Part shown: one piece after another, positions 30,569 through 50,990 of the stretch
Layout of the letters: each line of letters opens with the position of its first letter
Position numbering within the stretch: the stretch's first letter is position 1
Assembly: GCA_964035545.1 (NCBI GenBank)
Contig: OZ037769.1
Location: 14,538,633 to 14,602,632, forward strand
Direction of reading: 5' to 3'
From: Bugula neritina
Lineage: Eukaryota > Animalia > Bryozoa
Length of the DNA stretch: 64,000 bases
Notes under the pieces: generated by a model
The model's input: the letters and a program-made list of their open reading frames with translations, nothing else
The model's database searches: none
Told to the model about the DNA's origin: nothing
Program-made: the position numbers and the translations under genes

Positions 30569-31885
30569 CTTGATATTTTAGTATTTCTACTAAATCCTGA
30601 TAAAATAATAAAATACTCTAAAAGATATCCTGGCCAATAAACAGAAGTACTAAATTAAAAGTGTTTCAGCTTTAGAAAAACTTGGAAATTTCAAAATATA
30701 AGATGTCTTAGCTTAAAAAGCCATGGAAATGGTATAAAAGCAAAATTAAAAATCAAAATACAAAACATAAAGACTTGCTATTTGGTTGCTGAAAGCTTTG
30801 AGGATGAGAAGGTATTGGGGAAGCAGCAATTGATAGACATATTTAGCCATATTAATTATTCCTTGAAATTTATTCTCAATGTTTGTGCAACTGGGTGGAT
30901 ATATATAGGTATATATATATACCTATTTTAACATCACCAAAAACTTATAGATTAAATCTCTCTCTATTATTCAAAGTGACAATAGGAATCCTAATAAACT
31001 GTCTAAAAATCCTAGATACATAGAACGATAATGGCAAACATTTGTATTTTTTCAATCTTGCGTTTCTTCAAATTTAAGAATTTGACTTCTAGTATAACTC
31101 AACGTCATAAAATACTTTTTGTAGGCAGATGTCTATAAAGCTTACCCAGCTGTGAGTTCATAAAACAGTCAACAAGTGGAAAAATATCTTGCATATAATA
31201 ATCTGTATCAGTTATCAAATATAATAATTTCTTTTTATGTTAGAACTATAAATACAAGTTTTAGATAAGCCTTCAACTAAAAATATTAATTTAAAATCAT
31301 ATAGCACATTTAGTATTTATTTATTTTGTTTCAATATGTTATGTGCAAGAATGATATATTTATTACTGTTTTATATAGTTGTGTATATAACTAAAGACTT
31401 GGCCTCATAATTGTGAGAATGACACGAAACACCGTGTGATGATTTTACTGAGTTATCTTCTTGCAATGATCATGTATGTTTTGCTCCTGATAATTCTACC
31501 AGAGTTACTTTAAACAAAAAATCAACTAATACAAAGGACTTCAAATATATTAGTTTCCTTATTACCTTTTCTCCACAGAATTTTAAAACTGCTCATAAGA
31601 ATGTATGCTTTAAATTTTACTCGTATATAATAGTGTTTTGCTTGATATTCTTAAACAATTAATCAGCTTTTACAACATTTCTTCAAAACCTTTCTATTGC
31701 ACCTCCCTCCATGGAGCATTTTACTAGTGCTAATTTATACCTTTATATTAGCCTTTTAAACATATTAGGATAAATCTCTTCTGATAAATCATTCATAAAA
31801 TTTTAAAAATTACCATGCATGAGGCTTTTGTTACTAAAATTTGAGACATTATGTAATGGTATTTCTGCATTATTATGCCACTTAA

Positions 31886-32654
31886 AGGATTGCTCTATCT
31901 TGTCTAATAAATGGCCATTTAGGTCAAACACACATAATATTGTGTTTTTCTAAGCATGCATTGACAAAAAGCATTTGACCAAAGGTAGAAAAAGTTAGTT
32001 GAAGTTGAGGGTGTAGATTGGTAACAGCCAAAACGCCGATTTTGAAATGAGCTGGGAACTGTGACGTAACAGCGCCAGCATTCCTGCTGGTCACGTGACT
32101 ATACAAATGAATAACTATAGAAATATGACTGTGAGATGTGATCTTTCAGCTCGAAATTTGTATATTTATAGAAGTGCAAATGTGAATTATCTTAATCTAT
32201 AGTTTTTTGGCATTTTAAATAACATGTATGTAATAACATTAGGCTATATTTTGCTTGTAACCATTAGAAAAAAGCATTGCAAAAGCATGCATTCTTTAGG
32301 ATGAATGCCTGCGATCGATCTAAACTAGGTCAGATTGTGCAATATTACGGGCGCACCAAAGTTGACCTATATAGCGCACTGTAACTGCTTGAGCGTTATT
32401 GGTTGATATTGTGCTCAGCAACCTTGAATACTAGCGTTATAGTTAGCACGTGCAGCATAGTTACTGGCGTTCACACGTCACGTATTAGGCTATTCTTTTT
32501 CATGGCTGAAAATTTTACCGCCCTCAAAATTGGAATTTTGAAAAGCTGTTTTCTAGGCACATATCCCTTTGCAAAGTCACAATTGTTTGCATACACATTT
32601 AATTATAGTTCATAATTATAATGTGATTGTAATAAACTAAGATTGAGCAATCCT
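31886..32654. mobile_element. 769-bp non-autonomous DNA transposon with TTAA target-site duplication (Kolobok-like AG..CT termini)
   Basis: TTAA|AGGATTGCTCTATCTT ... AAGATTGAGCAATCCT|TTAA. The paralogous empty site GCCACTTAATTGTACAACC is at about 57425-57443. Confidence 0.9.
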
Positions 32655-33229
32655 TTAATTGTACAACCTGAATACATAACATCTTTACACAAACCCATAT
32701 AAATTGTGTATTATAGATATTAAAGTATATGAACATAATTTATTATATATAATAATGATCAAAAATTATACAATTACTAATAATAAAACTTACAATACTA
32801 TAAATGAATAACTGAAAACTCTTTGTTTCCGAGTTAATGATACATTTATAAAAACAGTTTTCCATGCACTGACCAAAGCAATAATTAGACCATTACCATT
32901 GACCACGAACGCATTAAAACAATAATCTAAATGTTGATGTGATTTTACGGTTAAATAAGGGCTAAAAGTTATTCCAAATACATTAAACTACTCGGTTTTT
33001 CTCACTATTTGGTCAGTAAAACAGATGTAGTTATGCTAAATTTTCTTGATTATATTTCATGGTTTAATGGTGTTTCTTCTCCCCCTTTCCTATGTAATTT
33101 TGTATATGATTATAGTTGAATTAGAATTGTGTCCTAAAGTTTTCACAAGTTTACATTTGCATTTTCCATGCTATACTTTCGGATAACAGTATGTCTGCTT
33201 TCTCTGAAAGTCTGGCCACATATTTCACA

Positions 33230-34906
33230 TTATTCTCTAGAGTGTAACTTCATGTGGTTAGTTAGATTTTGGTTTGTGATAAAAGTTTTGCTACAAGTTG
33301 CACATCTGTATGGCTTTTCTCCAGTATGAGTTCTCATATGAACAATTAGATGTCCTTTGTGGCTAAAATTCTTCCCACATGTTTCACATCTGTAAGGTTT
33401 TTCTCCACTGTGTATCCTTATATGAACCAATAGATTGCTACTTTGTATGAAAGTTTTGTCACATATTTTGCATTTGTGAGGTTTTTCTCTAGTGTGAGTT
33501 TTTATGTGAAGAGTTAGGTGAGCTTTTCGTTTAAAAGTATTGCTACAAAATTCACATCTGTAAGGCTTTTCTCCAGTGTGTATCCTCATATGAACAGTTA
33601 AAACTCCTTTTCGTTTAAAATTCTTCCCACATGTCTCACATCTGTAAGGTTTTTCTCCACTGTGCATCTTCATATGAATAAATAAACTACTTCTCCGTGT
33701 ATATGCTTTCTCACACTTTTCACATTTGTGTGACTTTTCTCTAGTATGAGTTCTCATATGGACAGTTAGATCTCCTTTTCGTATAAAACTTTTACCACAA
33801 CTTTCACACTTGTATGGTCTTTCCCCAGTGTGTATTCTTATATGAACAGCTAGAGCTCCTTTGTGGGTAAAAGTTTGCCCGCATGTTTCACACCTGCACA
33901 GGTTATCTCCACTATGTATTCTCATATGAATAGATAAATTACTTTTTCGTGTATATGCTTTGTCACACTTTCCACATTTGTATGGCTTTTCCAAGGTGTG
34001 TTTTATCACAGGGTGAGTTAGTTCATTCCTGTTTTTAAAAAAGGTGTTCGATGTTTCAAATTCATAAAAGTTTTCTTTATGGTTTATGTTCATATATTTA
34101 GGTAACTGTTGAGATTCTAAAACCTGTTTGCAATGATTTCTGTATGAGTCATTCTTTTCTAGCTCCATGCATATTCTTAAGTGTTCTTCACACTGCGCAC
34201 ACCTTTTGGGCTCCTTACTATCTCCTTGTGTGTCAAGGCCAAACAACGAATAAAAGAAGTTGTCCCCACATTCACTGCATCTTTTAAGAGTTTTATTGCC
34301 GTGCATTGTAGCATAATTATTTGAAACTGGCATCTGTAAACAACCTTCTTCTTTTGTGTCATCTGCTTCAGCTTTAAACTCTAAAAGAAGAAATTCCAGA
34401 TTCTCACCTCTGTCATTATTCTCAAATGCTAAGTCTTGCTCTAGATCTTCAATGTTAAACATTCAAAATTTACTTAGATAAAATATATAAGAGAGCAGCT
34501 GTGGTCTAGGGGTTAAGTTGTAGTGTTTGCTTTGTAAAAACGAATCTATGGCTTTGAACCCTGACAAAGGCCATTGGTGATGTTAGAAAGAGCATCTAGT
34601 CATAATTGCTATTGTGGGTCTTATTTAAAATATTTCTTAGCCCATTCTAACAAAGAGCTTTTTCATTATGTAGGATTCTCACAAGGATAGCCACTATTAA
34701 ATTTCTTGAGTTTAAAATGTAGAAGTTGAGCTATATATAGTAGTTCAAGCAATGCATGAGGAGATAAAAACAAATACATGAAAAATTGGTAAGTAAAATA
34801 CAAACTGTGAAAGTTACTAAAACAACATACCTAAATAGATTTGTCCTTATAACTTGTTTTATAAACGATAATGGAATGCAATTCTTTACTCACCACTGAT
34901 AGACAT
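33230..34906 (-). CDS. C2H2 zinc-finger protein, paralogue 4 (9 fingers). Exons 34906-34894 and 34440-33230
   Basis: Nine intact fingers, open frame, conserved short ATG exon. Confidence 0.93.
34492..34715 (+). mobile_element. SINE copy in the ZF4 intron
   Basis: GAGCAGCTGTGGTCTAGGGGTT...GGCCATTGGTGATGTTAG. Confidence 0.8.
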
Positions 34907-37388
34907 CTTGAAATTTTAGTATTTCTATACTCAACTAAATAAAATAATAAAATCCTCTAGAAAATATTACGTCTAATAAACAGAAGTACTAAATTAAAAG
35001 TTCTAAAGTTTTAGAAAATCTCGTAAATCTCCAAATTCGGAATAATAGCTTAAAAAGCTATAAAATTAGTACTAGCAAAATTTAAAACTCATGATGAAAA
35101 TATAAAGACTTGCTATTTGGTTGCTGAAAGCTTTGAGGACTAGAAGCAGGGCAAGGATTACAGCTAGTTATAGATCTATTAAAAATATTTGATAATATAT
35201 AAACACTGCATAGTGGCACACAATGAGCACAGCATTGTACCTCTGTAGCCCTAAGTTCTAGCACATACAAGGCTGTGTGTATACAGAGTGGTGCAGCTAC
35301 CACCCCTAACTCTTGCTGATTAGAAGTAGAACTCAGTGCTTATACATAATTGGCCATGTATTATATCGTACAGAGCTGCTAATGGAGTGTTTGTAATTAT
35401 TAGCTTGAAACTGTGCAGTGATTATTTGTGGGGGTATTGCCATACGCCCCTATTTTTATTGCCAATGAAAGTTCACAGTCTACTTTAAATCAGATGTAGA
35501 AATTAGGCCAATAATTTAATAGTTTATAAAAAGAGGATGAAACTGTGTACTTATATGACATATGATGTAATCGTAAACAATGTCATACTTTATAGCACAT
35601 TGTTATCTATTATAATGCACAACATACTATGTTATATAAAATATATTATACCCAACATCATAAATTGTCCTCTTAATTAGGCTTTACTAAATTTTACTTT
35701 ACTTTGATTTTTATTTTGTTATGCTTCAAAAACTGTATATTTTTGGGCACTTTTGGTCACTATAGCTTGGTGTCAGAACTCCCAAACCCCCTTCTTTAGT
35801 TGAGCTAACTCTGAAAAGAATATATTGGTAGAATCCTAAGAAAATGGTGCCTTGGAAACTTTTTGATTTTTAGCAAAAACACAAACAGGTTCATGCTGTG
35901 AAATATTCAAGCATTTTAGCAATGGCTCCTCTTGTTTGCTTAAGTAAAGCTGAGCTGGTAAGTTTGTCTTTGTTACATATTCTTTGTGACATCTTTACCC
36001 TTGCTACTTGGAATTTGTAATAAAGTAGCCATTTAAGTCAAGACTTGTTATTTAGTTACTTGAAGCTTTAACTTCTAGTTGCAACAGCTCTCATGACTAT
36101 TTGACTAAACATTCATTTTGACTCACTTCTAGTAAACTTAGTAAAGTATATGTGTTAATACTGCTATTTATCTTTAAAACCTGGAGTGGATGAAAAGACC
36201 TCAGGATATTTTTATTTGTTTATTGACAATTCACCAGCTCATGTAATAGAAAGAGTCACAGCTCTACTACAGTGTGCTCTGTTAACTTTAACCCTTTGCT
36301 CTAGTACAGCCAAACTTCTATTGTTACAGCTTAGCCGTGAATTAGTTAGTATTTTATTGAACAGCACCTAAACCACCCATAGAGCACATTCACTATAGAT
36401 CCAAGGCTACAATTTGAAGAAGGGACTAACCCTATTCATGCTGCCTAGCTACTGTCTCACTATTCAAGTTTATTGATATACTCTAATGACTACAGTCTTT
36501 GCTATTGACTAGACAAGCTTAAACTAAATATCAGGGATTATATTACAAACTGGGCAGCTATAACTTGTGTAATATAACCAAAGCTCTTTCCATGTATGTA
36601 TTCATCTATTCTTTATAACCAGCACCTTATTATTAGCTAACAAAGCCTTTTGTTACAAGCTATTATTTACATATTCACTAGTAGACTACAAACTTTCCTG
36701 TTGGGTGATTGCCAAATGTTATCAATAAACTAGAGCCAATACCAAAGAGCTTTAGTAAATGTGATTATTCATAACAGCCAATACCAAAGAGAATACCATT
36801 TTAGTAACCTATCACGTGATCATGTAACAACTATTACTTGCAGCAGCAATACTAACTAGCTCGCACTAAGAGGGAAGTCACTGTCCCTACCTAGTCATAG
36901 TGAGAAGATAATCAAGTTAGTTTATGAAGGATATTATGTAACATATGCTGATGGTGAAGAGTATCTCAACTCACCTGCTGACTTCATTTGAATTCGCTGT
37001 AAGTAAAATTTATTTATTATATAAATGTATATGACTAAAAAGTAAGTTCCCTTTGGTACATATAAACCTGTAGAGGGTAAAATTAGGTTGAATATGAAAA
37101 CAACTCAACCCTTTTGTGAGTGCACGAAACACAACACACGGAATAATACTTTGGTGTTATAAAATCTCTCAGCATACAATCTAACAGTACAGGTCTTGCT
37201 TGGGTTTATATTCTTTCTAAATTGCTGGCACATGGTATCAGTGGAGATATATTAAAGAAATGGCAAATGCTAGCTGTAGTTTGTATAAGTGTTTCACCAT
37301 GTATTTAGTTTAGCGAGATAAACTAAATAAAATGGTTGTTACAGATGAGAATAAAAATGTTAGTATAGCTGTAACCAGATACTACAGA

Positions 37389-40300
37389 ATGGGTCAACGT
37401 AAATCTGTCCCTCAACCTCCACCTCAACCTCCAGGTCAGTCAGTCTGTGATAAGTTGGTAAATTATATGATTACAAATACTACAACTAGTGACTACAGAA
37501 ATTTTTATGTTCTGAAAATAAGGTGCAGTAGCGGAGAAATTGAGATAGCCTAAGTTCTTTAAATTTTCTAACAAATTTTGAGTTGAGGTGCAGTTTGAAG
37601 TTCTCATGAAAGCATAACTTCTTTTGCTACATTTCTGATCTAGAAACACAGGCTTTTTTCACTTTTTTCATTACAGTACACCTACCTCTGTTTTGACCAC
37701 AGCTGAGTATTACATTGCTTGTGTTTATTATATAATTTTATATACTGAGTATAATGTATATAACTATTATACTGTACCTTATATTATGTTATTCTATAAC
37801 TATAATTAGATTCACCCAAAACATACTCTATTATATAGTATATTTTATTAAGTTACATTATAGTGCACTATAACCAATTATAATATTTTATAATATAATA
37901 TAACACATGCTGTACAGATCCATACTTAATTACTTCAATACTGTTTATAGTGTTGAAGCATATATTATTCTGTTATTTTATATCAACGTTATTATTCATA
38001 TAGTGGTGCAAATTTTGTAGAAATTTACAAGGTGTGGTTCAACACATCCAGTATAGATAGAGCTGATGATGAGTGGATGGGGAATAGGACTACATCCTAC
38101 ACTATAGAAGAGATCAAGAATAAAAGTAGACATCATACAGTGACTCATGTTAAACTGAGGAATGACATTCCTCCAAATATGAACACACTGTTCCCTCATC
38201 TCACACATCTGAGGGTACATGGAGCAGACAATGTTGACTGGACCAGGTATACTAGTGTTATATTAGAAAACTATATTCAATAAGTGACATATTGTCTTGT
38301 AGTAGAATGTGGAGTAATCTCCTCTCACAATAACACTATAGCTTTGGTAACAACTGTTGTATTATTTACCTTGTTTATTGTATTTCTATTTATTATTCAA
38401 TTTAATGTGAGTGAATCTCATTCAAACTAATATGTGATGATTATATTATACAGTTGAATACTTCGATATACCTGTGCGTTATGTTACAGCATATCTTCAC
38501 TGAAGAATCTTGAAGTATTGAATATATCATATAATGGCCCATCTGAAGGTCTACCTGACAATATATTCACATCCTTACTATCATTGAGAAAGTTGTACAT
38601 GAGTAGCTGTAGACTACCAACTATACCAAACAGGTGTGTATTATATGATAGTGTAGAATGGTCAGCTGAGAGTATTCCTGCTATCAGTAAACATGTAGGC
38701 TGATACAAACTATCAGGTCAAAATGTCGGCTACTAAACTCATAATCCATCTGAATAGCCTACCAGATAGAGAGATGATCTGATCAGCCTGGCAGAACAAA
38801 AACAGGATCTGTCTCAAAGGCCTGCAGTTGGTCAGTTCAGAAAGCAGTCTGTGACACCCTCAAGAGCGGAAACTGATAAACTGGTTTCATTAGGCAGGAA
38901 CACCCTGACCTGATTGATTATATAATTTAGTGTATAGTTAAAGGGACTTGTGTAGTGCATGTGTGCTTCACAAAGTGTTTAATATGTTGCATGAAGTAAT
39001 TATATTATTACTAAAATCTTATAAAACATTTCATATGGTATGTTACAGCATCTCTTCACTGAAGAATCTTGAGGTATTGAATATGTCATTGAATAAGCTA
39101 TCTGAAGGTCTACCTGACAATATATTCACATCCTTACTATCATTGAGAAAGTTGAACATGGAGAACTGTGATTTTTCAACTCTACCAAACAGGTGTGTAT
39201 TATATTATAATGTAGAATGGTACTGTAATAAGTATAAGTTATAAATATATTATAGATATGATTAGGTAGAAGTGTATGGTATTTCTTGATATACAACATT
39301 TCACACCTATGTGTTATGTTACAGCATATCTTCACTGAAGAATCTTGAGGTATTGAATATATCGGAGAATAACCTATCTGAAGGTCTACCTGACAATATA
39401 TTCACATCCTTACTATCATTGAGAGAGTTGAAAATGAGGAACTGTAAACTACCAACTCTACCAAAGAGGTGTGTATTATATTATACATTATGAAGTTGTC
39501 TGCACTATCTTTAGTGAGTCAACTAGACCCTGTGTATTCTACATGTCATAGGACAACTACTTTATTCTATCAGATATACTCAGATAGAAATGGTACAACA
39601 ACTTCTCACTTATTATTCTGATAAAATTATTGAAAATTAAATGGTTTGGCTATGAAATGAAATATATATTTAGACTTATCTGAGAGTTGTATATTGTAAC
39701 TCATAAAATTTTTAAGGAAGTTAATGACAGTTAAAACAACTAACAAAATATAATGATTTTCAGCTGTAATAGCTTATTCAGACGGTCAACCAATTGGACG
39801 AATAGCGGACCAAAATGGCACGACGATTGCGAATTTTGTTCGTTTTGGATCACGTGATTCGACCAATGCCTGTATTGCGCCAAACTAACGTCCTTTGATT
39901 AGTCTGACAGTAGAAGAATTTGTTTGTTTGGATCACGTGATTGACTTTTCAAAATTTCATTGGAACCTGACCCAGCTAGGGTCCAGCTGATGAATTTTAT
40001 TTGATTGCACTCCATTGGCTTATTTCAAAAAGCAAAATGTGTGGACATAATTTGCATGGCAAACAAGTTGCTCATTGCTTGTAACTAAATTAAATAAGCA
40101 ATATTTAATAATATTATTAATAATAAATAAAAATTAACTAAAATAAACAAATTTATAAGAAGAATATTTATTTTGCTTTAGTGAGCAGTGTTGTAGTTTT
40201 GTGCACTACTATAGTTTGTGGGGTTTCAGTGTGTATTATCGATTTAGCACATTAGCTCTAAGTTAATCAATAACTCTTGGTAGTAGCCGAGTAATAAAAC

Positions 40301-43300
40301 ACTTTGTTATCCAAGTTTAGTACAAAAGACAAACATTACAATTACTAACAATTTACAGCAGTATACATTCACAATACGTGCATTCAACTCGAGTCCTCGC
40401 TCACAACAACTCTAGACGCGGGAACTCTCACTTATTATTAGCCTGACCCCAGACTCTTCTTATTGGATAGTCCCATGTGACCCGTCACCTGCACGGGTAT
40501 GTTGTTCCAATATTCCCAGAACAGAGGAGAGACAAAATTTATCATTATTATATTATGTAAACCACCACATCGCTCCCTCCAGCAGAAAGTCCTCTTTCTG
40601 ATAATACATGTAATAATATAATGATATAAAAGAAACATTATAGCATAGAACGCCACATATATAAAACTCTATTTTAAGAAATAACCTTACATTGATAAGA
40701 AAAATAACACACATCAGGTCAGTTATAAAGAGAGGAGTAGCGTCACAGATAAAATAATACACAGCGAAGAATAGTGTAGACGATATTACAACGTTGCCCA
40801 CCGAGATCTGAAGCCGAGGAGGCAAGGTGATTAACTATGGATTCTGAGAGCAGTGTCTAGCCTGTCGGGCCCTCAGCCGCCTCTTGATTCGCCCCACAGA
40901 ATCTTTCAACTGATATAGTCCAGTGGTTGTGTTAAGTAAGTCTGGTGCTAACTGTGTAAAGTCAGCCTGGAGGCGCAGGAGTTGCTCTTTGATGGTCGCT
41001 AACCTGGTAGGCTGCTCTGGCGGTGGTGTGACTGGTCGGGGCGGGGACACTGCCACTTCTTCAGTTACTTCCGTACCACGGGTAGTCCCCGTTCCATTTC
41101 CAGTTCCTCCTCCACAACTGGTCTCGTGACCGGGAGGTGGCCACTCGAGTATTGCCTGAAAGAGTTCAACAGTGTTAGTGATGATACATTGAAGTACCGC
41201 CGGCATGAAACAGCCTGACAAGTGCTCTGTTCAGTTAAACACTCGTGAGATTTAGAGTAATGAATAGTTGGTCGAGAACACACACTGCAATGGCAAATTA
41301 CTAGAATCTCTAAGTCACTATACACATGTGTTTTCACCACTATGCTTCATCAGCAAGTATCTCCAGCTCTTTTAACTAAGGAGTTAGAGCCGATTGTTGC
41401 AGTCTAGTTTCCGTACCAGAGAATATAACTAACTCACCCTTCGATTCAGAATAGTAAGACATTTTGAATGCTAGGAATGATAATAATTATTTATTACTGG
41501 TACGTCTACTCTTAACTCCATCAGCATAAGAAAAGACTGGGTAACGTGTTTGCGAAGCGTGACTAGGGCACTGTGCCTCCGGCGGATAAATCTTATTTGT
41601 GATTCCGCCCGGGCGAAAGTTGATTTTTTTGTGATGCTCACAACTCCCACACTTTGTTGCCAGTCTCTCCGTATGGCACCCGATGGACTTTCATATTTGC
41701 CGCTTTCAACGCAGTCACATACGAAGTCTTTTAAATATGCTGGGGGGTGCCTAGTTCGCTGTCCTCATTCCAGGAGAAGCGGTGTACTCACAGGTGGACT
41801 ATTTAGTTCCACGGGTGGTTTTACCGGCCTGTCAGTGACTGGTATTCCTTCGTTTTGTTCTTCCCTGATTTCTCCAAATGGAGCCCCGCCCCCGGGGGCT
41901 TTTGCACTTCCGGACTCACTTCGGGTTCTGGAAGCGATGGCGTCAGATCTGGTGCTGGAGACGGCGAATGCACTTCCACTAATGGAAGTGGTCGTTCATC
42001 TCTTGCCAAGTCTTCTGCCCGCGGCACGACCACTTCATACTCTGGTCCATGCCGCTGTTGCCCACGCGTTGTTGTCTGCCTCCAGGGCTCCAACAATGGC
42101 GAGGCTTCTCCTACTGCATCCGGGCTAGCCCAATACGGTTTCAAGCGAGCCTCATTCTGGATGGACACAATTTAGCGCTAATTTTGAAATTTAGGGATTA
42201 AACTGAAAATCAAATAGCTGGCTTGGTAGCTATTCATTTAATCAAATTTAATGGCTATAAGTATCCAAAGATTACTAAGCTGCACCATCAACATTAATTT
42301 CAAAAACTTTTAGACTATTCGGGTGGAAACTGGAAGTTGAAAGTAAGCGCTATTGTTTATATACGCGAAAGACAATATATGGTCCATTGATCTGTGGATA
42401 GTGTCGCTTTCAGGGACATATATGGTCCATTGATCGCGTACGGGTTAATACTAGGATTCAGCTGTTTCCTCTGGGTGTTGGGGGCATGGGTCCGACCAGG
42501 TCAACAGCTACCACTTGCCACGGCCTTCCAACATATAACCTCCGTCGTCCCGCTTCACCAGGGAGACGACCATGCTTGCTGGCCTGGCAGACTTCACACT
42601 GTTTTACTCTGAGCCGTACATCACGCCCCATACTGGGCCAGTACCACCGGAGCTGTAATTTGGCGAGCACCCTTTGGACTCCTGCGTCAGCCTGTTTGTG
42701 GATGTCCCATATCACCTCTCGGCGTATGGCTGTCGGGCAGACCCCCCTCTTCCTTTCTGGGTGTCTGTCTGTCGCTGCTAAAGTCATGATCAGCAGACCA
42801 TCTTGCCCGATCCTCAGCGAGTCCCAACGTTGACGGTATAGCCGTAACTCAGTGCACCCCTGTCTTAGCTGGGTCGCCGCCCTTCCTTTTTGGCCCGATG
42901 TACGTCGGCTACCACCCTAGGTAGGCTTTCCTGAAGTCTCTTCAGCTCTCTTACGTTACCGGCCAAAACAGGGTTGGCGCGGAGGTTTTTTTACTACCTC
43001 CGGAGGCGCATCAGCCTTCTGTTTGAGTTGACCCTGGTCCCAGTCATACTCAACTCCCGGATGGACCAGTGCCGCCAACGCGGACAGGGGAGGACCTCCA
43101 TCTCTCTTCTCAATGTTGAAGCACTGTTTACATCCCCCGTCTGGTCGCCGGCTCAGTCCGTCTGCATTGCCGTGTTTGTTACCGGGTCGGTGTTCGATCC
43201 GGTAAGAGAACTCGGCTAGAATCTCGAGCCACATGGCGACCTGGCTAGACGGTTCTGCTCTCGTGCACAACCAAATCAAAGAGGCGTGGTCCAAACCTCT

Positions 43301-45089
43301 CTCGCCCCGGGTTGAGGAGCTTGTGGTTGGCAACGGTTGCGGCCCGGTCGCGGAGGGGGAAACGGCTTGCCTCTCGGCGTCTGCGCCGGTTCCCTTTCAG
43401 GCTCTCAGATCGGAAACCTGTCGAATCTGTTGTGGAGTGGCATAGAGAAGGCATTCGGCGGGTGGCGTTGGTAGCCTACTCGCCGTGGATGTTGCCATTC
43501 CGATGTGTCAGTACGCGGCACCCGGCGGGGTGATTGGCGTCTTCTCTTCCCTCTAGGTTTCATCATCGGCCCGCAATAGGCGGGAACATCTGCGGGCCGC
43601 GGTAGTTTAACCCTTGGAGAACAAGAGGGCAGTATCTCTGGAAATGTCCAGGTCTTCCGCATTCCCAGCAGAGGTTTTGTCCAGTGCCTGGTAATTGCAC
43701 CGGCAGCCCTAAAGGCTCACAGGCGGTATCTACCTGGTCTTGAGGGATTAATATGGTGACTAGCTTGGCTAACATGTCGGTCAGCTGCGCGACCTTCGAT
43801 GCGGCCGTCTGTTGTCTCACATTAACAGACGCGGGGGGGGGGTCTCGCCATTAGATCGGCCAGAGCAGCGGAGGGCTCCAGGTCTACTTGGCGAAAGGCC
43901 CCGCGGTTTTTATGCATATGATTTGCTAGGAGGTATGCTTCTCCTTCGGTGAGAGTGCCCTCGACCGTGGTGATTCCCCTCGCCAGAAACTGGTGATGGA
44001 GTCCCAAGTCGTTGATGGACCGCACAAAGACATCGTAAGTGTACCTTTCACGGTTCGCTTGAGGCAGGTCACTGTATGCGATATGCGCCAGCTTCATCAC
44101 CGTGGCAGCATGCTCTTGTAGGGGCATGTGAGGATTACGCCGTAACCTGAGCGTCAATGACGGAGATGCCAAAACGGGCCCGCAGAAAAGCAAAAATACT
44201 GTTAATGTCAGGTCCCAACCTGTAGGGTTTGGCCTTGTCCATTAACAACATTCTAAGCTTAAGCAGGGCCACCCTAGGTGGCCACTGTGTGACTTCCATC
44301 ACATCATTAAATTCTTGGATGAACTGTTCTACTTCTTCTTCACCTGTGAAAGTAGGTGCCTTCAGCCGGTATCTATCTTCATTCAGCTCCCTAGGAGCTC
44401 TCACTTCTTCTATTGCTGTCGGATGTACAGGAATAACATTATCTTCATGCTCACCTTCACTATGTTTGTTAGTTGGGCATTCGTCGGACCCAACGAATGA
44501 AGATTCTTAGTGTCTGAATAAGCTATAATTATGAAAATCTCACCGATTGTTATACTGAGATATATTATAATATTATACTGGGATATAATATAATGCTATA
44601 CTGAAATATATTATAATGTTATATTGAGATATATTTCTATAGTGTCATACTGAGATATATTATAATGGTATACTGAGATATAATATAATATTATACTGAG
44701 ATATATTATAATACTATACTGAGATATATTATAATGTTATACCGACATATATTATAATGTTATACTGAGATAATATATTATAATGTTATACTGAGATATG
44801 TTATACTGAGATATATTATGATATTATATTGAGATATATTATAATGTTATACTGAGATATGTTATACTGAGATATATTATAATACTATACTGAGATATAT
44901 TATAATGTTATACTGAGATATAATATAATGTTATACTGAGATATATTATAATGTTATACTGAGATATAGTATAATGGTAGTCAATCCAATGTTACTGCAT
45001 TATATCATTTACCTGCTCTTTTGTATCAAATAACTGGGAGTATAACTCCTAACCTATCTATAAATTTTATACAATACATTGCACAATCT

Positions 45090-45120
<31 letters not shown>

Positions 45121-48100
45121 TATGAATTGTGTTATGGAACTTCAATATTCATTTTTTGCAAACCCCATTTTTAAAGCCTCAAATATATATATGTTTCATA
45201 TTTATTAGCATACAGAGTCTACAGAAGTTAGAGGAACTGGAGATATCATGGAATAAGTTCACCAGTATACCATATCCTGTGTACTCACTGAGTAGTTTGC
45301 GGGTACTAGATATATTTTCCAATAGATCCCTGACATCCTTAGACCCTGAGATACTACAGCTAACGCAACTTCATAAACTGGATGTTGGATCTTGTAAGGG
45401 TCTCACCTCTCCTCCACTAGAAGTATGTGAGAGAGGCGTAAATGCTGTGAGACAATACTACACAGACTTGGCTAAAGGTGCTGGTAGGAGTCTACCATTT
45501 GCTATTGTAGCTATGCTAGGTAATACAATGGCCGGAAAGACCAGTTTAACCAAAACATTACAGAATGCTGACAGAAAGAGAGTTTTGACCAACAGAGAGC
45601 CAGATGCTGTGAAAGATGAGACAACAAAGGTGTTTAATGTTGAAGAAGTGGAGGTGGATGGTACAGTACTCCGTGTCATTGATATGGGAGGCCAGGAGGT
45701 CTACCATATCACCTATCAACTGACACTGAGACAGAACTGCATTCCAGTCATAGTAGTCAACATGGAACAGTATGATAAGACTTCAAGTGAATCAACAGAC
45801 AGAGAAGCTGTTAGAAGATTAGCCTTTGATTACATGTCTCACCTCTACATGGCTAACCCAACTCTTGGTCCACCAAAACTTATCTTCACCCATAAAGATA
45901 AGTTTCAAGATACAGCATTTCAGAAGCTTCGAAAAAGCTTTCTTGAAACATCAAATAAACTGTGTGAGGAGATGATTAGAGAAGAGAAAGAATTGGGTGG
46001 AGAATTTGCTCAAATAGAACATTTCAGTGAATCAGCCGGAGGAGTCTTTCTTGGTGAGGACATTTATGAGGTCGGAAAGGATGATAAGTATGAAGTGTTT
46101 GACCTGATCAAGGAATCTCTTCTTCATAGCAGTCAACATTTTGTGAAACCTTTACCTCTTGTCTGGGAGGAAGTGAATGAAAATGTGCTGTCTATTCCTT
46201 CTGTGTACAGCACCTTTGATGAGATACTGAAATACGTACAAACAGAACTTCAACACATTGAGTCAGGTCAGCTTGACATAATCCTCACATACATGCATGA
46301 CTGCGGCAAAGTCTTGTGGTATAAAGATATCAGCTGTCTCAGGCCGTACATATTCCACAATATTTCAGAAGTCACCAAACTCCTCTGTGTCTTGTATCAT
46401 CATGATCCTAAGATCTGGCAGAGTAGAGTTGATCAGTTCCAGCCATACTATTCGCAGACTGAACGACGTGTTGAGAAACAGGAACTTGAGAAATCTGTCA
46501 ATGATCTCACTGACACTGGTTTGATGATGCAGTCACTTCTTGTTTATTTCATTGAAAAAGAGACATCATTCAAAAGTTCTAAAGATGTTGAAGTTGCCGT
46601 CTGCTTACTCCAGACGTTTCGTTTGCTGTACAGTCCAATACATGGCAAATCTGAAGAGCCATGGTTCATTGTACCTCAGTATGCTAAAAACTACTGCAGC
46701 ACTTCTCCTTCCCCACCCAATGGCATTTTGCTTCAAGTGGAGACACACTTCAATGGTCTAGCCCTGCCACAATATGTCTACCACCAGATGACGATCGGTT
46801 TGTTGGAATCGTTCCCAGATGAGTTTGCTGTGATGAAAGTGAAGAGAAACGGAGCTGATGTCTTTCAAGATAAAATCCACACGAAGCTGGTACATGATTG
46901 CAAATCTAGAAAAGTGTCACTCTACGTGTCATCTAATGCTGCCAACATTAGCAGAATGTGGGAGAGACTCATCACCACCAACAACAACATCCTTAGACAT
47001 GTTTTAGAAAATTGGACAGCAAGTAGACCAGTCACTACATGCTACTGTGCTCACTGCCTTCTGCTAGGACTTCCTTGTCCTAAGAAAGTGCTCAATCCTC
47101 CATGGTGTCTTCACTCCTTGAAACATTCTCCATCAAAGCCCAGATTGTGTACTGGATCCTTAACAACTCTGTGTGGTGATGAGAAGATAAGGGGTGCTCT
47201 TCTCTATCCATGTATGTTTGGTTACATTATGGTGCAGTTCCTGTATTAAGTTTTATTTCATTGCAGTTTACCACATTTAGATATGAATTGAGGTAATTCT
47301 CCCCATTCCTTGGCATAATTGGGGTTAGAAAAAGAATTATTTATATATTCTATTTCCAAGTATTTCAAAATTTCAGGTCAAACATTGTCTGAGAGAGAAG
47401 CTGATGAGTTGGAGAAGTTTGTGAATGAGCTGAATCGTCGAGGAGCTCAAGAAAGATTAGCTAATTCTGGTAAATACGGAGTTACCAGTTTGTGCAAGCG
47501 TCTGTTTTTTGAATGTTGATCAAGTTCAACTTGAACTGGTTAAGCACTAAATGATTTTACTGCAGTTTATTTCATACCATGTCACCATTTTTTTGCAAGA
47601 ATTTGGGTTCTTTAAAAGTTTTGCTTTATTTGGTAAAGTAATGAACGTATATTATTGCACCACAGCTGAGTACTAGTTTGCCGATCATTGTGATATTATA
47701 TTTCTTATTTATTCCGTGATGTGATATGAATTTGTACTTTATAGTTGCCAACAGCAGCCAATCAGATTTCCCGACCTCCACAATAACAGCCAATGACGCT
47801 CTCAGTGATCTCTCTGATGATGATGAGAATCTGTACCCTGATGAAGAGGAAGTTGAAAATATGAAGTTTATAAGACTCAGACTGATTCCCACCAGCAACC
47901 CGAATATAATACAGCTGTTCTCAAACACTGACAAGGTGATCACTTCTAATGTCTATGTCATTTATTCTTGCCAGTTGTTTAGTTCGGCAGTTACAAGTAT
48001 TTCTCTGTTACATCCAGGTGTTTAAAACAACCCCAAAAAGAGGAAGAGCTCTGATAATAAACAACATGAACTTTGATAAGAGACCCGACTTGTGTAGGAA

Positions 48101-50990
48101 AGGTTCAGATGTGGATGTAGAGAATCTTTCCACCATGTTGAAAACTCTCAAGTTTGATGTTGTGACACACGCAGACCTGAAGGCTGAGGTATGTTTTGCT
48201 GCTGTTTACTTATCAAGGTAAAAACTTACTCCTCTGTTTGTTTACAAACACTACATATGTATACAGAATACGGTGTAACGGTTTACAGGTGTAAGGCCAG
48301 GTTTACAGGTGTAAGGCTGGGTTTACAGGTGTAAGGCTGGGTTTACAGGTGCAAGGCCGGGTTTACAGATATAAGGGTTTACAGGTGTAAGGGTTTACAG
48401 ATGTAAGGCTGGGTTTACAGGTTTATGGGTTTACAGGTGTAAGGGTTTACAGGTGTAAGGCTGGGTTTACAGGTGTAAGGCCGGGTTTAATGTTGAGGCC
48501 TCTGGACACTGAAGCAGGGTTAATCCAGCACCACTTATTGACCATTTTTAATAAATAATGGTTAACAAATTAAGTGTTTAAAGTAAACAAGTCAAATGAG
48601 TCATTATTATTGTTATTAATAATTTTGACTTAAGAATAGGAATGGGTTTATATTCTATAACTGAATTGGCTTATTAATAGTTTTACCGGGGCTGATTAAT
48701 GCCGAAGTCCTTACTTTAACATAAATTGTTAAATTAAAATTAAAGTAAATGAGCTTTATAAGCTATTTCTTCACCTCATATGATTTTAGTTTAGCTAAAT
48801 GTTCAAAGATCTAGTACAAATTTTCATAAGTTTTAAAGAATCTTTGAAATTTAGATAAGACTTCCGCCATCCCATTTTCAATATTTTACTTCTTGTTGTA
48901 GGAAATGCTGTCTGCTGTAACATTTGAGGTAAAAAAAGAGGAATACAAAGATCTGGGATGTCATGTGTTAGTTATCATGACTCATGGAGGGTTGAACAAC
49001 TACATCTATGGTACAGACTTAAAACGAGTCAAACTAACAGATGTGTATGACCTTCTAACTCCTTTGAACTTCCCAGGAATGGCTGGCAAACCAAAGGTTG
49101 TTATACTGGAAGTCTGTAGTGGAGGTAATCAGTTTAAAAAATTATTTGTGGTCACTGTAGAGTTGTGTTCTCTTGAATGCTAGTATTTGCTGGAGTATGT
49201 TAACTTACAACCCATTTCACAATTATGTAGATTAATTCTTACATATTTGACACTGTTTATGTTCATCATATGAAAATTAAATATAATTTTTTTATATCTC
49301 TCACAGAGAGGAGTGATTATGGCCAAAGAGGTATAGACAGATTTGATATCGGAGAATCACAAAAGGAGGGGGAGAGTATCTCACTTCCACTTGCTAAAGT
49401 TCCAGGAGATAAAAATGCGGAGGCTATGAATAGACTGAACTATGATGACCTGCTAGTAGTGAAATCTAGCATGGAGTGTAAGTAAGACACATGTAATGGA
49501 GTACAAGTTACTGTATCCATGATATTATACTGTATAACTAGTCAACTAGTTGTATTTCCAATAGTTGAATAATTTATATGATCGATTCTACTTGTAGCAT
49601 TCATATCAAAAAGCCACCCTGAGTATGGATCTCTAATGGTTAGAGCTCTTGTATCTTCCATATATAAACATGCCTGTCACCATGACCTCTTCACCATATT
49701 CAAACAGGTGAATGTATTGCACTTTGTTACACTTATAAGCATGGAGAACTGATGAAATTGAAAATGGCACAAATTAATGTTAGCTGTTGGCAAACTTTAT
49801 TAATTTTAGGAGTAGATATTTATAATTATTTTACAGTTTGTTATAGACTATAGAGTATTCACAGTTTACTTTTGTTATAGTGTAGGTATTGTTACAGTGA
49901 AGGTATTGTTATAGTGAATGTATTGTTATAGGGTAGACATTGTTATAGTGTAGGTATTGTTATAGTGTAGGTATTGTTATAGTGAAGGTATTGTTATAGT
50001 GTAGGTATTGTTATAGTGTAGGTATTGTTATAGTGAAGGTATTGTTATAGTGTAGGTATTGTTATAGTGAAGGTATTGTTATAGTGAAGGTGTTGTTATA
50101 GTGTAGGTATTGTTACAGTGTAGGTATTGTTACAGTGTAGGTATTGTTATAGTGTAGGTATTGTTATAGTGTAGGTATTGTTATAGTGTAGGTATTGTTA
50201 TAGTGTAGGTATTGTTATAGTGTAGGTATTGTTATAGTGAAGGTATTGTTATAGTGTAGGTATTGTTATAGTGTAGGTATTGTTATAGTGAAGGTATTGT
50301 TATAGTGAAGGTATTGTTATAGTGTAGGTATTGTTATAGTGTAGGTATTGTTATAGTGAAGGTATTGTTAGAGTGTAGGTATTTTTATAGTGAAGGTATT
50401 TTTATAGTGAAGGTGTTGTTATAGTGTAGGTATTGTTACAGTGTAGGTATTGTTATAGTGTAGGTATTGTTATAGTGTAGGTATTGTTATAGTGTAGGTA
50501 TTGTTATAGTGAAGGTATTGTTATAGTGTAGGTATTGTTATAGTGTAGGTATTGTTATAGTGAAGGTATTGTTATAGTGTAGGTATTGTTATAGTGAAGG
50601 TATTGTTATAGTGAAGGTAATGTTATAGTAAAGGTATTGTTATAGTGAAGGTATTGTTATAGTGAAGGTATTGTAATAGTGAAGGTATTGTTATAGTGTA
50701 GGTGTTGTTATAGTGAAGGTATGGTCATAGTTAAGGTATTGTTATAGTGAAGGTATTGTTATAGTGAAGGTATTGGTTATTTAGAATAATCTGGTATAGA
50801 GTAGTAATAAGATTTCAATGTTTACTTGCTTAACATTCTTCAGGTGCAGACGAAAGTGAGAAAACTGTGTTTAGACAAAAATCTAGAGAGTGGAGGACAG
50901 TTGGTTGTAGTTTGGGATACTCTCACTCATATGAGAAAACTTTACCTCTTTCCTGGTTTTAATGGCCTCAAAAGAGAAGATGACTCTTAG
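37389..50990 (+). CDS. LRR-Roc-COR (ROCO)-caspase fusion protein, about 1270 aa. Exons: 37389-37434, 38021-38246, 38490-38633, 39049-39192, 39325-39468, 45209-47211, 47377-47469, 47745-47935, 48018-48188, 48902-49124, 49307-49477, 49598-49707, 50844-50990
   Basis: All junctions are GT-AG and phase-compatible; total 3813 nt with one terminal TAG. LRRs (LEVLNISxNxL); Roc motifs G1 GNTMAGKTS, G3 DMGGQEVY, G4 THKD; COR (PLPLVW...LTYMHDCGKVLWY); caspase p20 (RGRALIINN, RKGSDVD, VIMTHG, GKPKVVILEVCSG) and p10 (DDLLVV, GSLMVRAL, TLTHMRKLYLFPG). Confidence 0.9.
38490..39468 (+). repeat. Three tandem 144-nt phase-2/phase-2 exons, each encoding two 24-aa LRRs
   Basis: 38490-38633, 39049-39192 and 39325-39468 share the flanks ATGTTACAG| and |GTGTGTATTAT and have an identical central core. 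Confidence 0.95.
40217..40569 (-). repeat. Probable 3' LTR (about 353 bp) with adjacent polypurine tract
   Basis: On the minus strand GGAGGGAGCGA is followed directly by TGTGGTGGTTT. The other end reads TGTGGGGTTT on the plus strand, giving TG..CA inverted termini. No second LTR is available to confirm the boundaries. Confidence 0.65.
40217..44540 (-). mobile_element. Defective Ty3/Gypsy-type LTR retrotransposon, antisense in the ROCO-caspase intron
   Basis: GC-rich island. Gag fragments (KAPTFTGEEEVEQFIQEF), CCHC knuckle CWECGRPGHFQRYC, RNase H end (DHASLIWL...YRIEHRPGNKHGNADGLSRRP) and integrase N-terminus (WYWPSM...CEVCQ...PWQVVAVDLVGP). Many frameshifts; no recognisable protease or RT. 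Confidence 0.9.
44548..44978. repeat. 23-bp minisatellite (GTTATACTGAGATATATTATAAT)n, roughly 19 units
   Basis: Direct tandem repetition with length variants. Confidence 0.95.
48279..48488. repeat. 20/15-bp minisatellite (GGTTTACAGGTGTAAGGCTG)n in a caspase-domain intron
   Basis: About 11 tandem units. Confidence 0.95.
49873..50775. repeat. 17-bp minisatellite (TATTGTTATAGTG[T/A]AGG)n, about 53 units, in the last intron
   Basis: Highly homogeneous tandem array with two main variants. Confidence 0.97.

What the first reader, a model, noticed from the sequence alone, without database searches (positions are those of the whole stretch)
38490..39468. Cassette LRR exons with frozen framework and variable ligand-facing residues
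Seen: three 144-nt phase 2-2 exons share an identical core (TCTGAAGGTCTACCTGACAATATATTCACATCCTTACTATCATTGAGA) and splice flanks. They differ mainly by amino-acid-changing substitutions in and just after the beta-strand motif: NISYNGP/NMSLNKL/NISENNL and KLYMSSCRL/KLNMENCDF/ELKMRNCKL. Known: these positions form the concave binding face of LRRs, and exon-cassette LRR shuffling has been described for ROCO genes of the brown alga Ectocarpus. Inference: diversifying selection plus exon gain, loss or skipping generates a receptor repertoire, since any exon can be skipped in frame.
Basis: partly seen in the sequence, partly recalled or inferred. Interest (0 to 1): 0.85.

Follow-up and report, generated by a model that had tools for sequence, protein, structure and literature searches.

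The report
Hypervariable LRR cassette exons, bryozoan ROCO-caspase gene
Three near-identical 144-base exons are interchangeable building blocks of the sensor arm of an LRR-GTPase-caspase gene from a large animal (probably bryozoan) gene family. Their likely ligand-facing residues change several times faster than neutral DNA, while the rest of each exon is kept uniform by recombination.

Summary
Window 38490-38633, 39049-39192 and 39325-39468 are 144-nt AG/GT exons in phase 2-2, each encoding two LRRs and sharing an identical 48-nt core.

- **Family size:** at least 150 stop-free copies genome-wide (580 candidates). They build the LRR arm of at least 65 (164 candidate) LRR-Roc-COR-caspase genes.
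- **Intactness:** 79 of 79 sampled copies are in frame.
- **Array length:** complete arrays hold 2 to 9 cassettes.
- **Diversifying selection:** in 36 independent cassette pairs chosen by intron similarity, intron divergence is 0.080 and framework pS is 0.048. Nonsynonymous divergence at nine hypervariable codons is 0.31. Six codons (x5, x7, x8 or x10 of LxxLxLxxNxL) pass Bonferroni correction. The pre-defined xxLxLxx set gives omega 7.8 (2dlnL 77).
- **Concerted evolution:** framework pS between paralogues (0.01-0.09) is far below Roc-COR pS (0.26-0.33), and the introns on either side of an exon usually have different closest relatives. So recombination occurs inside the frozen framework.
- **Splicing:** exon skipping would keep the frame, because every junction codon is AG|C. 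Skipping was not demonstrable from the available read contigs.

The closest precedent is the 72-nt LRR cassettes of brown-algal ROCO genes. I found no description in animals. The scan noted the same family earlier on other DNA of this genome (s1-453596, s1-444236).

The parts
36901..36998 (+). 5' untranslated exon. The start is the minimum supported; the donor GT is at 36999.
   Evidence: The RNA-like runs X1 and X2 cover it but not the flanking intron. A joint runs from 36995 to 37345.
37345..37434 (+). First coding exon. ATG at 37389 gives MGQRKSVPQPPPQPP. It ends in phase 1. The MGxxxS start resembles a myristoylation motif; this is inference.
   Evidence: Translation and splice sites. RNA-like joint 37434 to 38026.
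38021..38246 (+). Exon 2, the N-terminal region before the cassettes. It ends in phase 2 with ..AG.
   Evidence: Open frame and donor. Homologous exon upstream of the cassette arrays in 11 paralogues. Exon-only coverage in X1 and X2.
38490..38633 (+). LRR cassette exon 1: 144 nt, phase 2-2, two LRRs. It is positionally conserved as the first cassette in four C5 paralogues.
   Evidence: On the unit tree it forms a clade with the first cassettes of C5:17.31, C5:14.73 and C5:17.33 at 100% support.
39049..39192 (+). LRR cassette exon 2: 144 nt, phase 2-2.
   Evidence: Exon-only coverage in RNA-like runs.
39325..39468 (+). LRR cassette exon 3: 144 nt, phase 2-2.
   Evidence: Exon-only coverage in RNA-like runs.
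39469..45208 (+). 5.7-kb intron between the last cassette and the Roc-COR exon. It holds a degraded LTR-retroelement remnant on the minus strand (about 40800-44500, GC 42-54%).
   Evidence: Composition. Integrase_H2C2 match at 42458-42787 on the minus strand.
45209..47246 (+). Large exon. It has a phase-2 acceptor and a cassette-like LRR start, followed by more LRRs, the Roc GTPase and the COR region.
   Evidence: Acceptor and frame. Pfam: Roc 30.4 bits (cut-off 27), LRR_4 28.2 bits, COR-A 16.9 bits (below cut-off). At least 65 paralogous copies in the genome.
47949..49183 (+). Caspase (Peptidase_C14) coding pieces downstream on the same strand. Exon boundaries were not refined.
   Evidence: Pfam Peptidase_C14, E = 1e-9 and 6e-9. 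The same order is seen in 4 of 4 checkable paralogues, in JGI contigs and in single RefSeq models of Watersipora subatra.

Best explanation
The three exons belong to a germline family of interchangeable cassette exons, each encoding a pair of LRRs. The cassettes sit between a fixed N-terminal exon and the LRR-Roc-COR exon of an LRR-Roc-COR-caspase gene. That gene is one of roughly 100 or more paralogues in what is most likely a bryozoan genome.

**Two processes are shown here.**
1. Homologous recombination (unequal crossing-over or gene conversion) has breakpoints inside the conserved exon framework.
   - It keeps the framework nearly identical between cassettes and between genes, even at synonymous sites.
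   - It re-assorts the flanking introns and the two hypervariable patches of an exon.
   - It adds or removes whole cassettes without breaking the frame, because every junction is phase 2 with the codon AG|C.
2. Diversifying selection acts on solvent-exposed x-positions of LxxLxLxxN/CxL: x5, x8 and x10 in the first repeat, and x3, x5, x7, x8, x10 and x12 in the second. As a result, essentially every cassette has a unique set of polar, charged or aromatic residues at those positions.

**Inferred, not shown.** The variable face binds diverse ligands (pathogen or non-self molecules). Binding is then passed through the Roc-COR GTPase switch to the fused caspase. Exon skipping could add isoforms but is unproven.
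For: **Family and intactness**
- 77 cassettes of 144 nt plus 2 in-frame shorter ones (129 and 132 nt) were found in about 307 kb. All have AG/GT and none has a stop.
- At least 150 stop-free copies genome-wide and at least 65 Roc-COR paralogues.

**Variability map**
- Amino-acid diversity is 0.44-0.87 at codons 11, 14, 16, 34, 36, 38, 39, 41 and 43. It is mostly 0.2 or less elsewhere. Cys40 is invariant.

**Selection**
- In 36 disjoint pairs chosen by intron similarity: intron p 0.080, framework pS 0.048, framework pN 0.040, hypervariable pS 0.086, hypervariable pN 0.309. Wilcoxon test of hypervariable pN above intron gives P = 1e-7.
- Site-wise, codons 11, 14, 36, 38, 39 and 41 are Bonferroni-significant.
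- GY94 omega is 7.8 for the pre-defined xxLxLxx set and 1.04 for the framework. The test against omega = 1 gives 2dlnL = 77.
- Hypervariable residues are 95% polar, charged or aromatic (77% expected). There are 0 stops in 462 codons, against 32 expected.

**Recombination and concerted evolution**
- Of 56 exons with strong partners on both flanks, only 7 have the same partner on both sides. 13 are clear mosaics.
- Upstream and downstream flank similarity are almost uncorrelated (rho 0.11).
- Roc-COR pS between paralogues is 0.26-0.33, against cassette framework pS of 0.014-0.09.

**Gain and loss**
- Complete arrays hold 2, 3, 3, 4, 4, 5, 5, 9 and 9 cassettes.
- There are tandem within-gene clades, and the nearest neighbour lies in the same gene for 22 of 77 cassettes, against 4.2 expected.

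**Splicing**
- RNA-like runs cover exons and not introns. They show exon 2-to-cassette and cassette-to-cassette junctions at the predicted boundaries.

**Architecture elsewhere**
- JGI contigs show five cassettes, then Roc-COR, then Peptidase_C14.
- Watersipora has single LRR-Roc-COR-caspase RefSeq models.
Against: - No ligand, binding assay or expression response is known, so the receptor role rests on analogy.
- The tree-based omega values assume a single tree, although recombination is pervasive. The tree-free pair test does not need a tree, but its pairs were chosen for low intron divergence, which may understate the neutral rate. This is offset by local pS of about 0.10 within the hypervariable clusters.
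- The nine-codon hypervariable set was defined after looking at the data. The pre-defined set gives a smaller excess (pN/pS 2.2, pN/intron 3.0), and three of its ten codons (x2 and x3 of repeat A, x2 of repeat B) are conserved.
- The concave-face assignment rests on the motif register and general LRR knowledge. No model of this protein was made.
Confidence: 0.8

Rival explanations
1. There is no positive selection. The variable codons are simply unconstrained sites in an exon whose remaining bases are under very strong purifying selection, possibly also at the nucleotide level for splicing signals.
For: Hypervariable pN between paralogous genes (0.27-0.41) is only about equal to the Roc-COR synonymous divergence of the same genes (0.26-0.33). 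Framework synonymous sites are unusually conserved.
Against: - Hypervariable pN is 3.8 times the divergence of the flanking introns of the same pairs, and 3.6 times pS of the same codons.
- Very young duplicates (intron divergence of about 5% or less) already differ at 9-39% of nonsynonymous sites in the hypervariable codons.
- Amino-acid composition is far from mutational expectation, and no stop occurs in 462 codons against 32 expected.
- Framework omega of about 1 at a very low rate fits recent homogenisation, not long-term purifying selection.
Confidence: 0.05
2. The main source of diversity is at the RNA or somatic level: regulated exon skipping or choice (Dscam-like), or somatic cassette rearrangement (VLR-like). 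Individual cells or zooids would then express different cassette combinations.
For: - Every cassette is symmetric, with the same AG|C junction codon, so any subset can be skipped in frame.
- About 17 nt of non-consensus donor flank (GTGTGTATTATATTATA) is conserved in all cassettes.
- Brown-algal ROCO cassettes are reported to be alternatively spliced (PMC11378527).
- The framework, frozen even at synonymous sites, would be an ideal homology substrate.
Against: - No skipping isoform or rearranged DNA form could be shown. All joints seen are explained by paralogue cross-mapping of short contigs.
- Cassette-to-cassette junctions exist in RNA-like runs, so the exons are not mutually exclusive.
- The cassettes are ordinary exons inside complete genes, unlike VLR germline cassettes.
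- Germline diversity alone (76 unique peptides among 77 cassettes, at least 65 genes) already explains a repertoire.
Confidence: 0.1
3. The repeats are an assembly or very recent duplication artefact with no biological significance, for example collapsed or mis-joined tandem repeats.
For: The cassettes are highly similar, and the tandem units inside some arrays are 93-96% identical.
Against: - Introns between cassettes differ in length and sequence.
- 76 of 77 sampled peptides are unique.
- Independent JGI metagenome contigs from two samples carry the same architecture.
- DNA-like runs cover the locus, and RNA-like runs cover its exons.
Confidence: 0.02

Closest known systems
Brown-algal (Ectocarpus, Saccharina) LRR-ROCO genes with shuffled LRR cassette exons (Zambounis et al. 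2012, PMC3341825; Front Plant Sci 2024, PMC11378527)
   Same: - LRR-Roc-COR genes in clustered families.
- The LRR domain is built from same-length, symmetric, phase-2 exons that each encode whole repeats.
- Repeat number varies between paralogues.
- Positive selection falls on beta-strand-face residues.
- Both are proposed as immune receptor repertoires.
   Different: - Here the organism is an animal.
- The cassette is 144 nt and holds two LRRs (an Asn-ladder repeat plus a Cys-ladder repeat), not 72 nt with one LRR.
- The genes carry a C-terminal caspase.
- No inactivated or inverted intronic cassettes were found (0 of 79), whereas they are frequent in Ectocarpus.
- The framework is homogenised at synonymous sites.
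- Alternative splicing was not shown here.
- Common descent of the cassette structure was not tested and is unlikely.
Lamprey and hagfish variable lymphocyte receptors (VLR)
   Same: - The same typical LRR subtype: VLR A, VLR B and repebodies are among the best PDB sequence matches.
- Cassette logic.
- Variability is concentrated on the beta-strand and following loop of each repeat (the VLR side of this comparison is from general knowledge).
   Different: - VLR diversity is made somatically, by copy-choice insertion of non-exonic germline cassettes into an incomplete gene.
- Here the cassettes are canonical exons of complete germline genes, and the proteins are probably cytosolic: no signal peptide was seen, and they carry a Roc-COR-caspase tail.
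Plant NLR / R-gene LRR domains
   Same: - Hypervariable solvent-exposed xxLxLxx residues with dN above dS.
- Clustered birth-and-death families.
- Unequal crossing-over and gene conversion between repeats change repeat number.
   Different: - The switch domain differs: a Roc-COR GTPase rather than an NB-ARC ATPase.
- Plant LRR repeats are not usually packaged one cassette per symmetric exon.
- The effector here is a fused caspase.
Animal ROCO proteins MFHAS1/MASL1, LRRK1/2 and DAPK1
   Same: LRR plus Roc-COR core. NCBI names the Watersipora relatives 'MFHAS1 homolog'.
   Different: - Vertebrate ROCOs are single-copy or low-copy genes and have no caspase.
- I know of no report that they have cassette-built, hypervariable LRRs.
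- Sequence identity to Branchiostoma MFHAS1 is only about 26% over a third of the query.

Membership tests
ROCO proteins (LRR-Roc-COR) | Roc (Ras of complex) GTPase domain | tested here: met
   Pfam PF08477 Roc scores 30.4 bits (cut-off 27), E = 5e-7, at residues 127-217 of the large exon. A P-loop GNTMAGKT is present.
ROCO proteins (LRR-Roc-COR) | COR domain directly after Roc in the same polypeptide | tested here: inconclusive
   The window protein scores 16.9 bits on COR-A, below the 35.3 cut-off. Relatives at 38-42% identity carry precomputed PF16095 hits. Watersipora P0109 scores 25.2 bits. The region is conserved in all paralogues.
ROCO proteins (LRR-Roc-COR) | N-terminal LRR domain | tested here: met
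   Pfam LRR_1, LRR_4 and LRR_8 match the cassette and the start of the large exon. The cassette aligns in register with solved LRR structures.
Brown-algal type ROCO LRR cassette-exon system | Whole LRRs encoded by equal-length exons of symmetric phase that can be added or removed in frame | tested here: met
   144 nt, phase 2-2, junction codon AG|C at every boundary. The two length variants, 129 and 132 nt, are also multiples of three.
Brown-algal type ROCO LRR cassette-exon system | Cassette number and order vary between closely related paralogues (exon shuffling) | tested here: met
   Complete arrays hold 2 to 9 cassettes. Tandem within-gene clades. Mosaic intron flanks. In two young gene copies (collinear at 96.5% identity), the cassette peptides re-associate patch A and patch B.
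Brown-algal type ROCO LRR cassette-exon system | Positive selection on residues of the beta-strand face | tested here: met
Brown-algal type ROCO LRR cassette-exon system | Inactivated or reverse-oriented spare cassettes in introns | tested here: not met
   All 79 copies in about 307 kb are intact, carry splice sites and lie on the gene's strand. An nhmmer profile search finds no degenerate copies.
Brown-algal type ROCO LRR cassette-exon system | Alternative splicing of cassettes | tested here: inconclusive
   Only short Logan contigs were available. Junctions between cassettes are seen, but paralogue cross-mapping prevents calling any skip.
VLR-type somatic cassette assembly | Incomplete germline gene plus flanking non-exonic cassettes copied in somatically | tested here: not met
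   The cassettes are canonical AG/GT exons arrayed inside complete genes. No rearranged DNA form was established.
Dscam-type mutually exclusive exon clusters | Only one exon of a cluster is included per transcript | tested here: not met
   RNA-like contigs join the 3' end of one cassette directly to the 5' start of another.

The most novel reading that the evidence does not exclude
The identity of the cassette framework at synonymous sites is itself maintained as a recombination substrate. Cassettes and their two hypervariable patches would then be shuffled continually between genes, and possibly also somatically or through regulated exon skipping. That would give a colonial lophotrochozoan an anticipatory-like or allorecognition repertoire of LRR-GTPase-caspase receptors, a third independent LRR cassette system beside lamprey VLRs and brown-algal ROCOs.
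Probability: 0.1. Interest if true: 0.95.

Novelty: new variant of a known kind. Interest (0 to 1): 0.75.

Why it matters
Cassette-built, positively selected LRR domains on ROCO GTPases have been described in brown algae, where they prompted the question of whether such systems can act as flexible immune repertoires. Here the same logic appears in an animal.

- **Scale:** hundreds of cassettes and roughly 100 or more genes.
- **Built-in effector:** each receptor is fused to a caspase, so recognition and cell-death execution would sit in one chain.
- **Selection signal:** it is strong and is calibrated against the cassettes' own introns.
- **Mechanism:** the data also show how the repertoire is renewed, by recombination inside a framework that is homogenised even at synonymous sites.
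- **Testable candidates:** bryozoans are colonial, fuse or reject neighbours and harbour symbionts, yet their immune and allorecognition genes are essentially unknown.
- **Limit on the claim:** everything seen is explained by germline evolution. No somatic diversification is shown.

Tried and rejected
**Sampling limits**
The sample is therefore about 307 kb and 79 cassettes.
- A search for a second haplotype copy of the locus found only the locus itself at 100%. No allele comparison was possible.

**Methods that failed or were not run**
- Ancestral-state (SLAC-type) substitution counting: the machine does not offer ancestral sequences. I did not attempt it by any other route and used tree-free pair tests and likelihood ratios instead.
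- Exon skipping: all four runs laid are short Logan contigs.
  - The apparent skip 38230 to 39322 is a paralogue's exon 2-to-cassette junction, with 16 differing letters.
  - 39204 to 39478 and 38368 to 39314 have sides of only 28-31 nt and lie in sequence shared by many cassettes.
  - None can be called a skip or a deletion allele.
- A profile search for degenerate or inverted cassettes found only weak hits to the LRRs of the large exon.
- The bacterial promoter/terminator scan is irrelevant to a eukaryotic gene.
- Literature searches for bryozoan or animal ROCO cassettes or ROCO-caspase fusions returned nothing relevant.
- No structure was predicted. A spliced, joined protein model was not built or sent to any tool; exons were searched one at a time by reference.

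**Explanations rejected**
- Targeted hypermutation: synonymous change at the hypervariable codons is not raised above the intron rate.
- Neutral relaxation.
- VLR-like or Dscam-like membership.
- Assembly artefact.
Full report
**1. Observation**

Window 38490-38633, 39049-39192 and 39325-39468 (+ strand) are three 144-nt segments. Each is preceded by ..ttacAG and followed by GTgtgtatta.
- Only the frame starting at base 2 is open. One base completes the preceding codon and two are left over, so the exons are phase 2-2.
- Each exon encodes two leucine-rich repeats. The first is a 25-residue repeat with an Asn ladder (LEVLNISxNNL...). The second is a 23-residue repeat with a Cys at the ladder position (LRELxMxxCxL...).
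- The three exons differ at 26 bases in 16 codons, and 13 of those codons change the amino acid.
- Pfam recognises LRR_1, LRR_4 and LRR_8. The peptide aligns in register with solved LRR proteins: LRRTM, VLR-A, VLR-B and repebodies.

**2. The gene**

- A 5' untranslated exon ends at 36998.
- The first coding exon (37345-37434, ATG at 37389) ends in phase 1.
- Exon 2 (38021-38246) ends in phase 2 with ..AG.
- After the three cassettes comes a 5.7-kb intron holding a degraded LTR-retroelement remnant.
- A roughly 2-kb exon starts at 45209. It opens with a cassette-like LRR and continues through Roc (30.4 bits, above the cut-off) and the COR region.
- Caspase (Peptidase_C14) pieces follow at 47949-49183.
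- Every boundary (exon 2 to cassette, cassette to cassette, cassette to large exon) makes the same codon AG|C, which is Ser. Any cassette could therefore be gained, lost or skipped without a frame or junction change.
- I did not build or submit a joined protein model. Exons were handled one at a time by reference.

**3. Organism and family**

- All named close relatives are RefSeq proteins of the bryozoan Watersipora subatra (31-38% identity). Two of them are single LRR-Roc-COR-caspase models of about 1,415 residues.
- Metagenome contigs at 60-80% identity carry the same architecture: five 144-nt cassettes, then Roc-COR, then Peptidase_C14.
- The genome (216 Mb) is therefore most likely a bryozoan. 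This is an inference.
- In this genome, at least 65 Roc-COR exons match at E of 2e-277 or better, out of 164 candidates, and most are open.
- The cassette peptide has 150 of 150 scored matches without stops, out of 580 candidates.
- The scan had already noted this family on two other pieces of this genome (s1-453596, s1-444236). My results agree with those notes.

**4. Larger sample**

In about 307 kb I found 77 cassettes of 144 nt and two in-frame variants of 129 and 132 nt. All have AG/GT and none has a stop. A profile search found no degenerate or inverted copies. Of the 77 peptides, 76 are unique.

**5. Where the variation lies**

- Amino-acid diversity is 0.44-0.87 at nine codons and mostly 0.2 or less elsewhere:
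  - repeat A: codons 11, 14 and 16 (x5, x8, x10);
  - repeat B: codons 34, 36, 38, 39, 41 and 43 (x3, x5, x7, x8, x10, x12).
- Cys40 and most scaffold leucines are invariant or nearly so.
- Third positions of framework codons are almost invariant (pi 0-0.1).
- By established LRR knowledge, the x-positions of LxxLxLxxN lie on the beta-strand and following loop of the concave, ligand-binding side. This register was checked only by alignment, not by a model of this protein.

**6. Test of diversifying selection**

Tree-free test. I chose 36 disjoint cassette pairs by similarity of their flanking introns, excluding 20 nt next to the splice sites, so that the exon classes were not used for selection.

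| Class | Pooled divergence |
|---|---|
| Intron | 0.080 |
| Framework pS | 0.048 |
| Framework pN | 0.040 |
| Hypervariable pS | 0.086 |
| Hypervariable pN | 0.309 |

- Wilcoxon test of hypervariable pN above intron: P = 1e-7.
- Site by site against the intron rate, codons 11, 14, 36, 38, 39 and 41 are significant after Bonferroni correction, at 2.6 to 6.1 times the intron rate. Codons 16, 34 and 43 are nominally significant. No scaffold position exceeds the intron rate.
- The pre-defined xxLxLxx set gives pN/pS 2.2 and pN/intron 3.0.

Likelihood test. With a GY94 model on the unit tree:

| Codon set | Omega | 2dlnL against omega = 1 |
|---|---|---|
| Whole exon | 2.99 | 94 |
| Pre-defined xxLxLxx set | 7.8 | 77 |
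| Post-hoc framework codons | 1.04 | 0.09 |

These tree-based values are weakened by recombination.

Composition. Hypervariable residues are 95% polar, charged or aromatic (N, E, D, K, Y, G, S, R, W, H), and there are no stops in 462 codons against 32 expected. These sites are therefore selected, not merely relaxed. Synonymous change at these codons is not raised, which argues against targeted hypermutation.

**7. Why the framework is frozen**

- Between paralogous genes, the Roc-COR exon has pS 0.26-0.33. The cassette framework of the same genes has pS 0.014-0.09, while hypervariable pN is 0.27-0.41.
- Introns beyond about 20-30 nt from the splice sites are close to unalignable between random cassette pairs.
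- Of 56 exons with a strong partner for both flanks, only 7 have the same partner on both sides, and 13 are clear mosaics.
- Upstream and downstream flank similarities are nearly uncorrelated (rho 0.11).
- Divergence of the hypervariable patches hardly depends on flank similarity.
- Two young gene copies are collinear at 96.5% identity. Their shared introns I0-I2 differ by 1.8-3.0%, yet some of their cassette peptides combine patch A of one cassette with patch B of another.

Together with a framework omega of about 1 at a very low rate, this indicates concerted evolution by recombination with breakpoints inside the conserved exon sequence. Diversity at the interleaved hypervariable codons is retained by selection.

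**8. Gain and loss**

- Complete arrays hold 2, 3, 3, 4, 4, 5, 5, 9 and 9 cassettes. Positions listed indicate further arrays of 8-9.
- The unit tree shows positional conservation: the first cassettes of four C5 genes form a clade at 100% support.
- It also shows within-gene tandem clades. The nearest neighbour lies in the same gene for 22 of 77 cassettes, against 4.2 expected by shuffling (maximum 15).

**9. Transcription and splicing**

- Two RNA-like runs (X1, described as metagenomic RNA-Seq, and X2) cover the predicted exons and not most introns.
- Two other runs (X11, X12) cover both exons and introns and so look like DNA.
- Contigs join exon 1 to exon 2, an exon 2 tail to a cassette start, and a cassette end to a cassette start at the predicted boundaries. 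Several of these come from paralogues.
- Because the contigs are 57-257 nt long and the cassettes share long identical words, no exon-skipping isoform or deletion allele can be called.
- The assembly holds no second haplotype of the locus.

**10. Comparison and novelty**

The closest precedent is the 72-nt, one-LRR, phase-2 cassette exons of brown-algal ROCO genes, which show exon shuffling, positive selection and reported alternative splicing (PMC3341825, PMC11378527). The system here differs in five ways:
- the host is an animal;
- the cassette is a two-repeat unit of 144 nt;
- the genes carry a fused caspase;
- no dead or inverted spare cassettes were found;
- the framework is homogenised at synonymous sites.

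It is not VLR-like, because the cassettes are ordinary exons in complete genes. It is not Dscam-like, because cassettes are spliced to each other. Searches of the held literature found no description in bryozoans or other animals. I therefore rate it a new variant of a known kind.

**11. Verdict**

It is untested for exon skipping and haplotype variation. The receptor function and the signalling route (LRR to Roc-COR to caspase) are inferences.

Noticed in passing
window 40800-44500 (minus strand): A GC-rich (42-54%) degraded LTR-retroelement remnant sits inside the 5.7-kb intron between the last cassette and the Roc-COR exon. It has an integrase zinc-binding domain (PF17921) at 42458-42787 and broken ORFs around it.
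   Followed up: partly
window 19796-34462 and 54018-58444 (minus strand): A cluster of at least six tandem C2H2 zinc-finger genes or fragments flanks the ROCO-caspase gene on both sides. They share an N-terminal region and have 84-nt finger periodicity.
   Followed up: no
window 49872-50780: A 17-nt unit is repeated about 53 times at 93% identity, in a region of strong G-over-C skew (0.2-0.4), just downstream of the caspase-coding pieces.
   Followed up: no
window 44548-44976: A 23-nt tandem repeat (about 18 copies) lies about 230 nt upstream of the acceptor of the Roc-COR exon.
   Followed up: no
window 38634-39048: The first inter-cassette intron is 415 nt, against about 130 nt in compact arrays. 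Parts of it match dispersed copies on other contigs at 69-80% identity, which suggests a small inserted repeat element.
   Followed up: partly
window 38539-38541 (codon 17 of cassette 1): Cassette 1 has Pro at the conserved L11 scaffold position of the first repeat. It is the only one of 77 sampled cassettes to do so. Cassette 2 has Phe at scaffold codon 42. This gene's cassettes may be slightly off-consensus.
   Followed up: no
window 39204 to 39478 and 38368 to 39314: DNA-like runs X11 and X12 contain short contigs that join these points (X1 also shows the first joint). That would remove one or two cassette units. The sides are only 28-31 nt and lie in sequence shared by many cassettes, so this could be either paralogue cross-mapping or a real copy-number allele.
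   Followed up: partly
P0097 and P0109 (Watersipora subatra RefSeq models): Another bryozoan encodes LRR-Roc-COR-caspase in single gene models, with the same alternating Asn-ladder and Cys-ladder LRR pairs. There the repeats within one protein look much more diverged from each other by eye, so the frozen framework seems specific to the window's lineage.
   Followed up: partly
C1:34936454 and C3:4517744 of the own genome (loci L023, L016): Two cassette length variants (129 and 132 nt) carry in-frame deletions of 5 and 4 residues in the first repeat and keep AG/GT. The 129-nt variant has lost the otherwise invariant Cys.
   Followed up: partly
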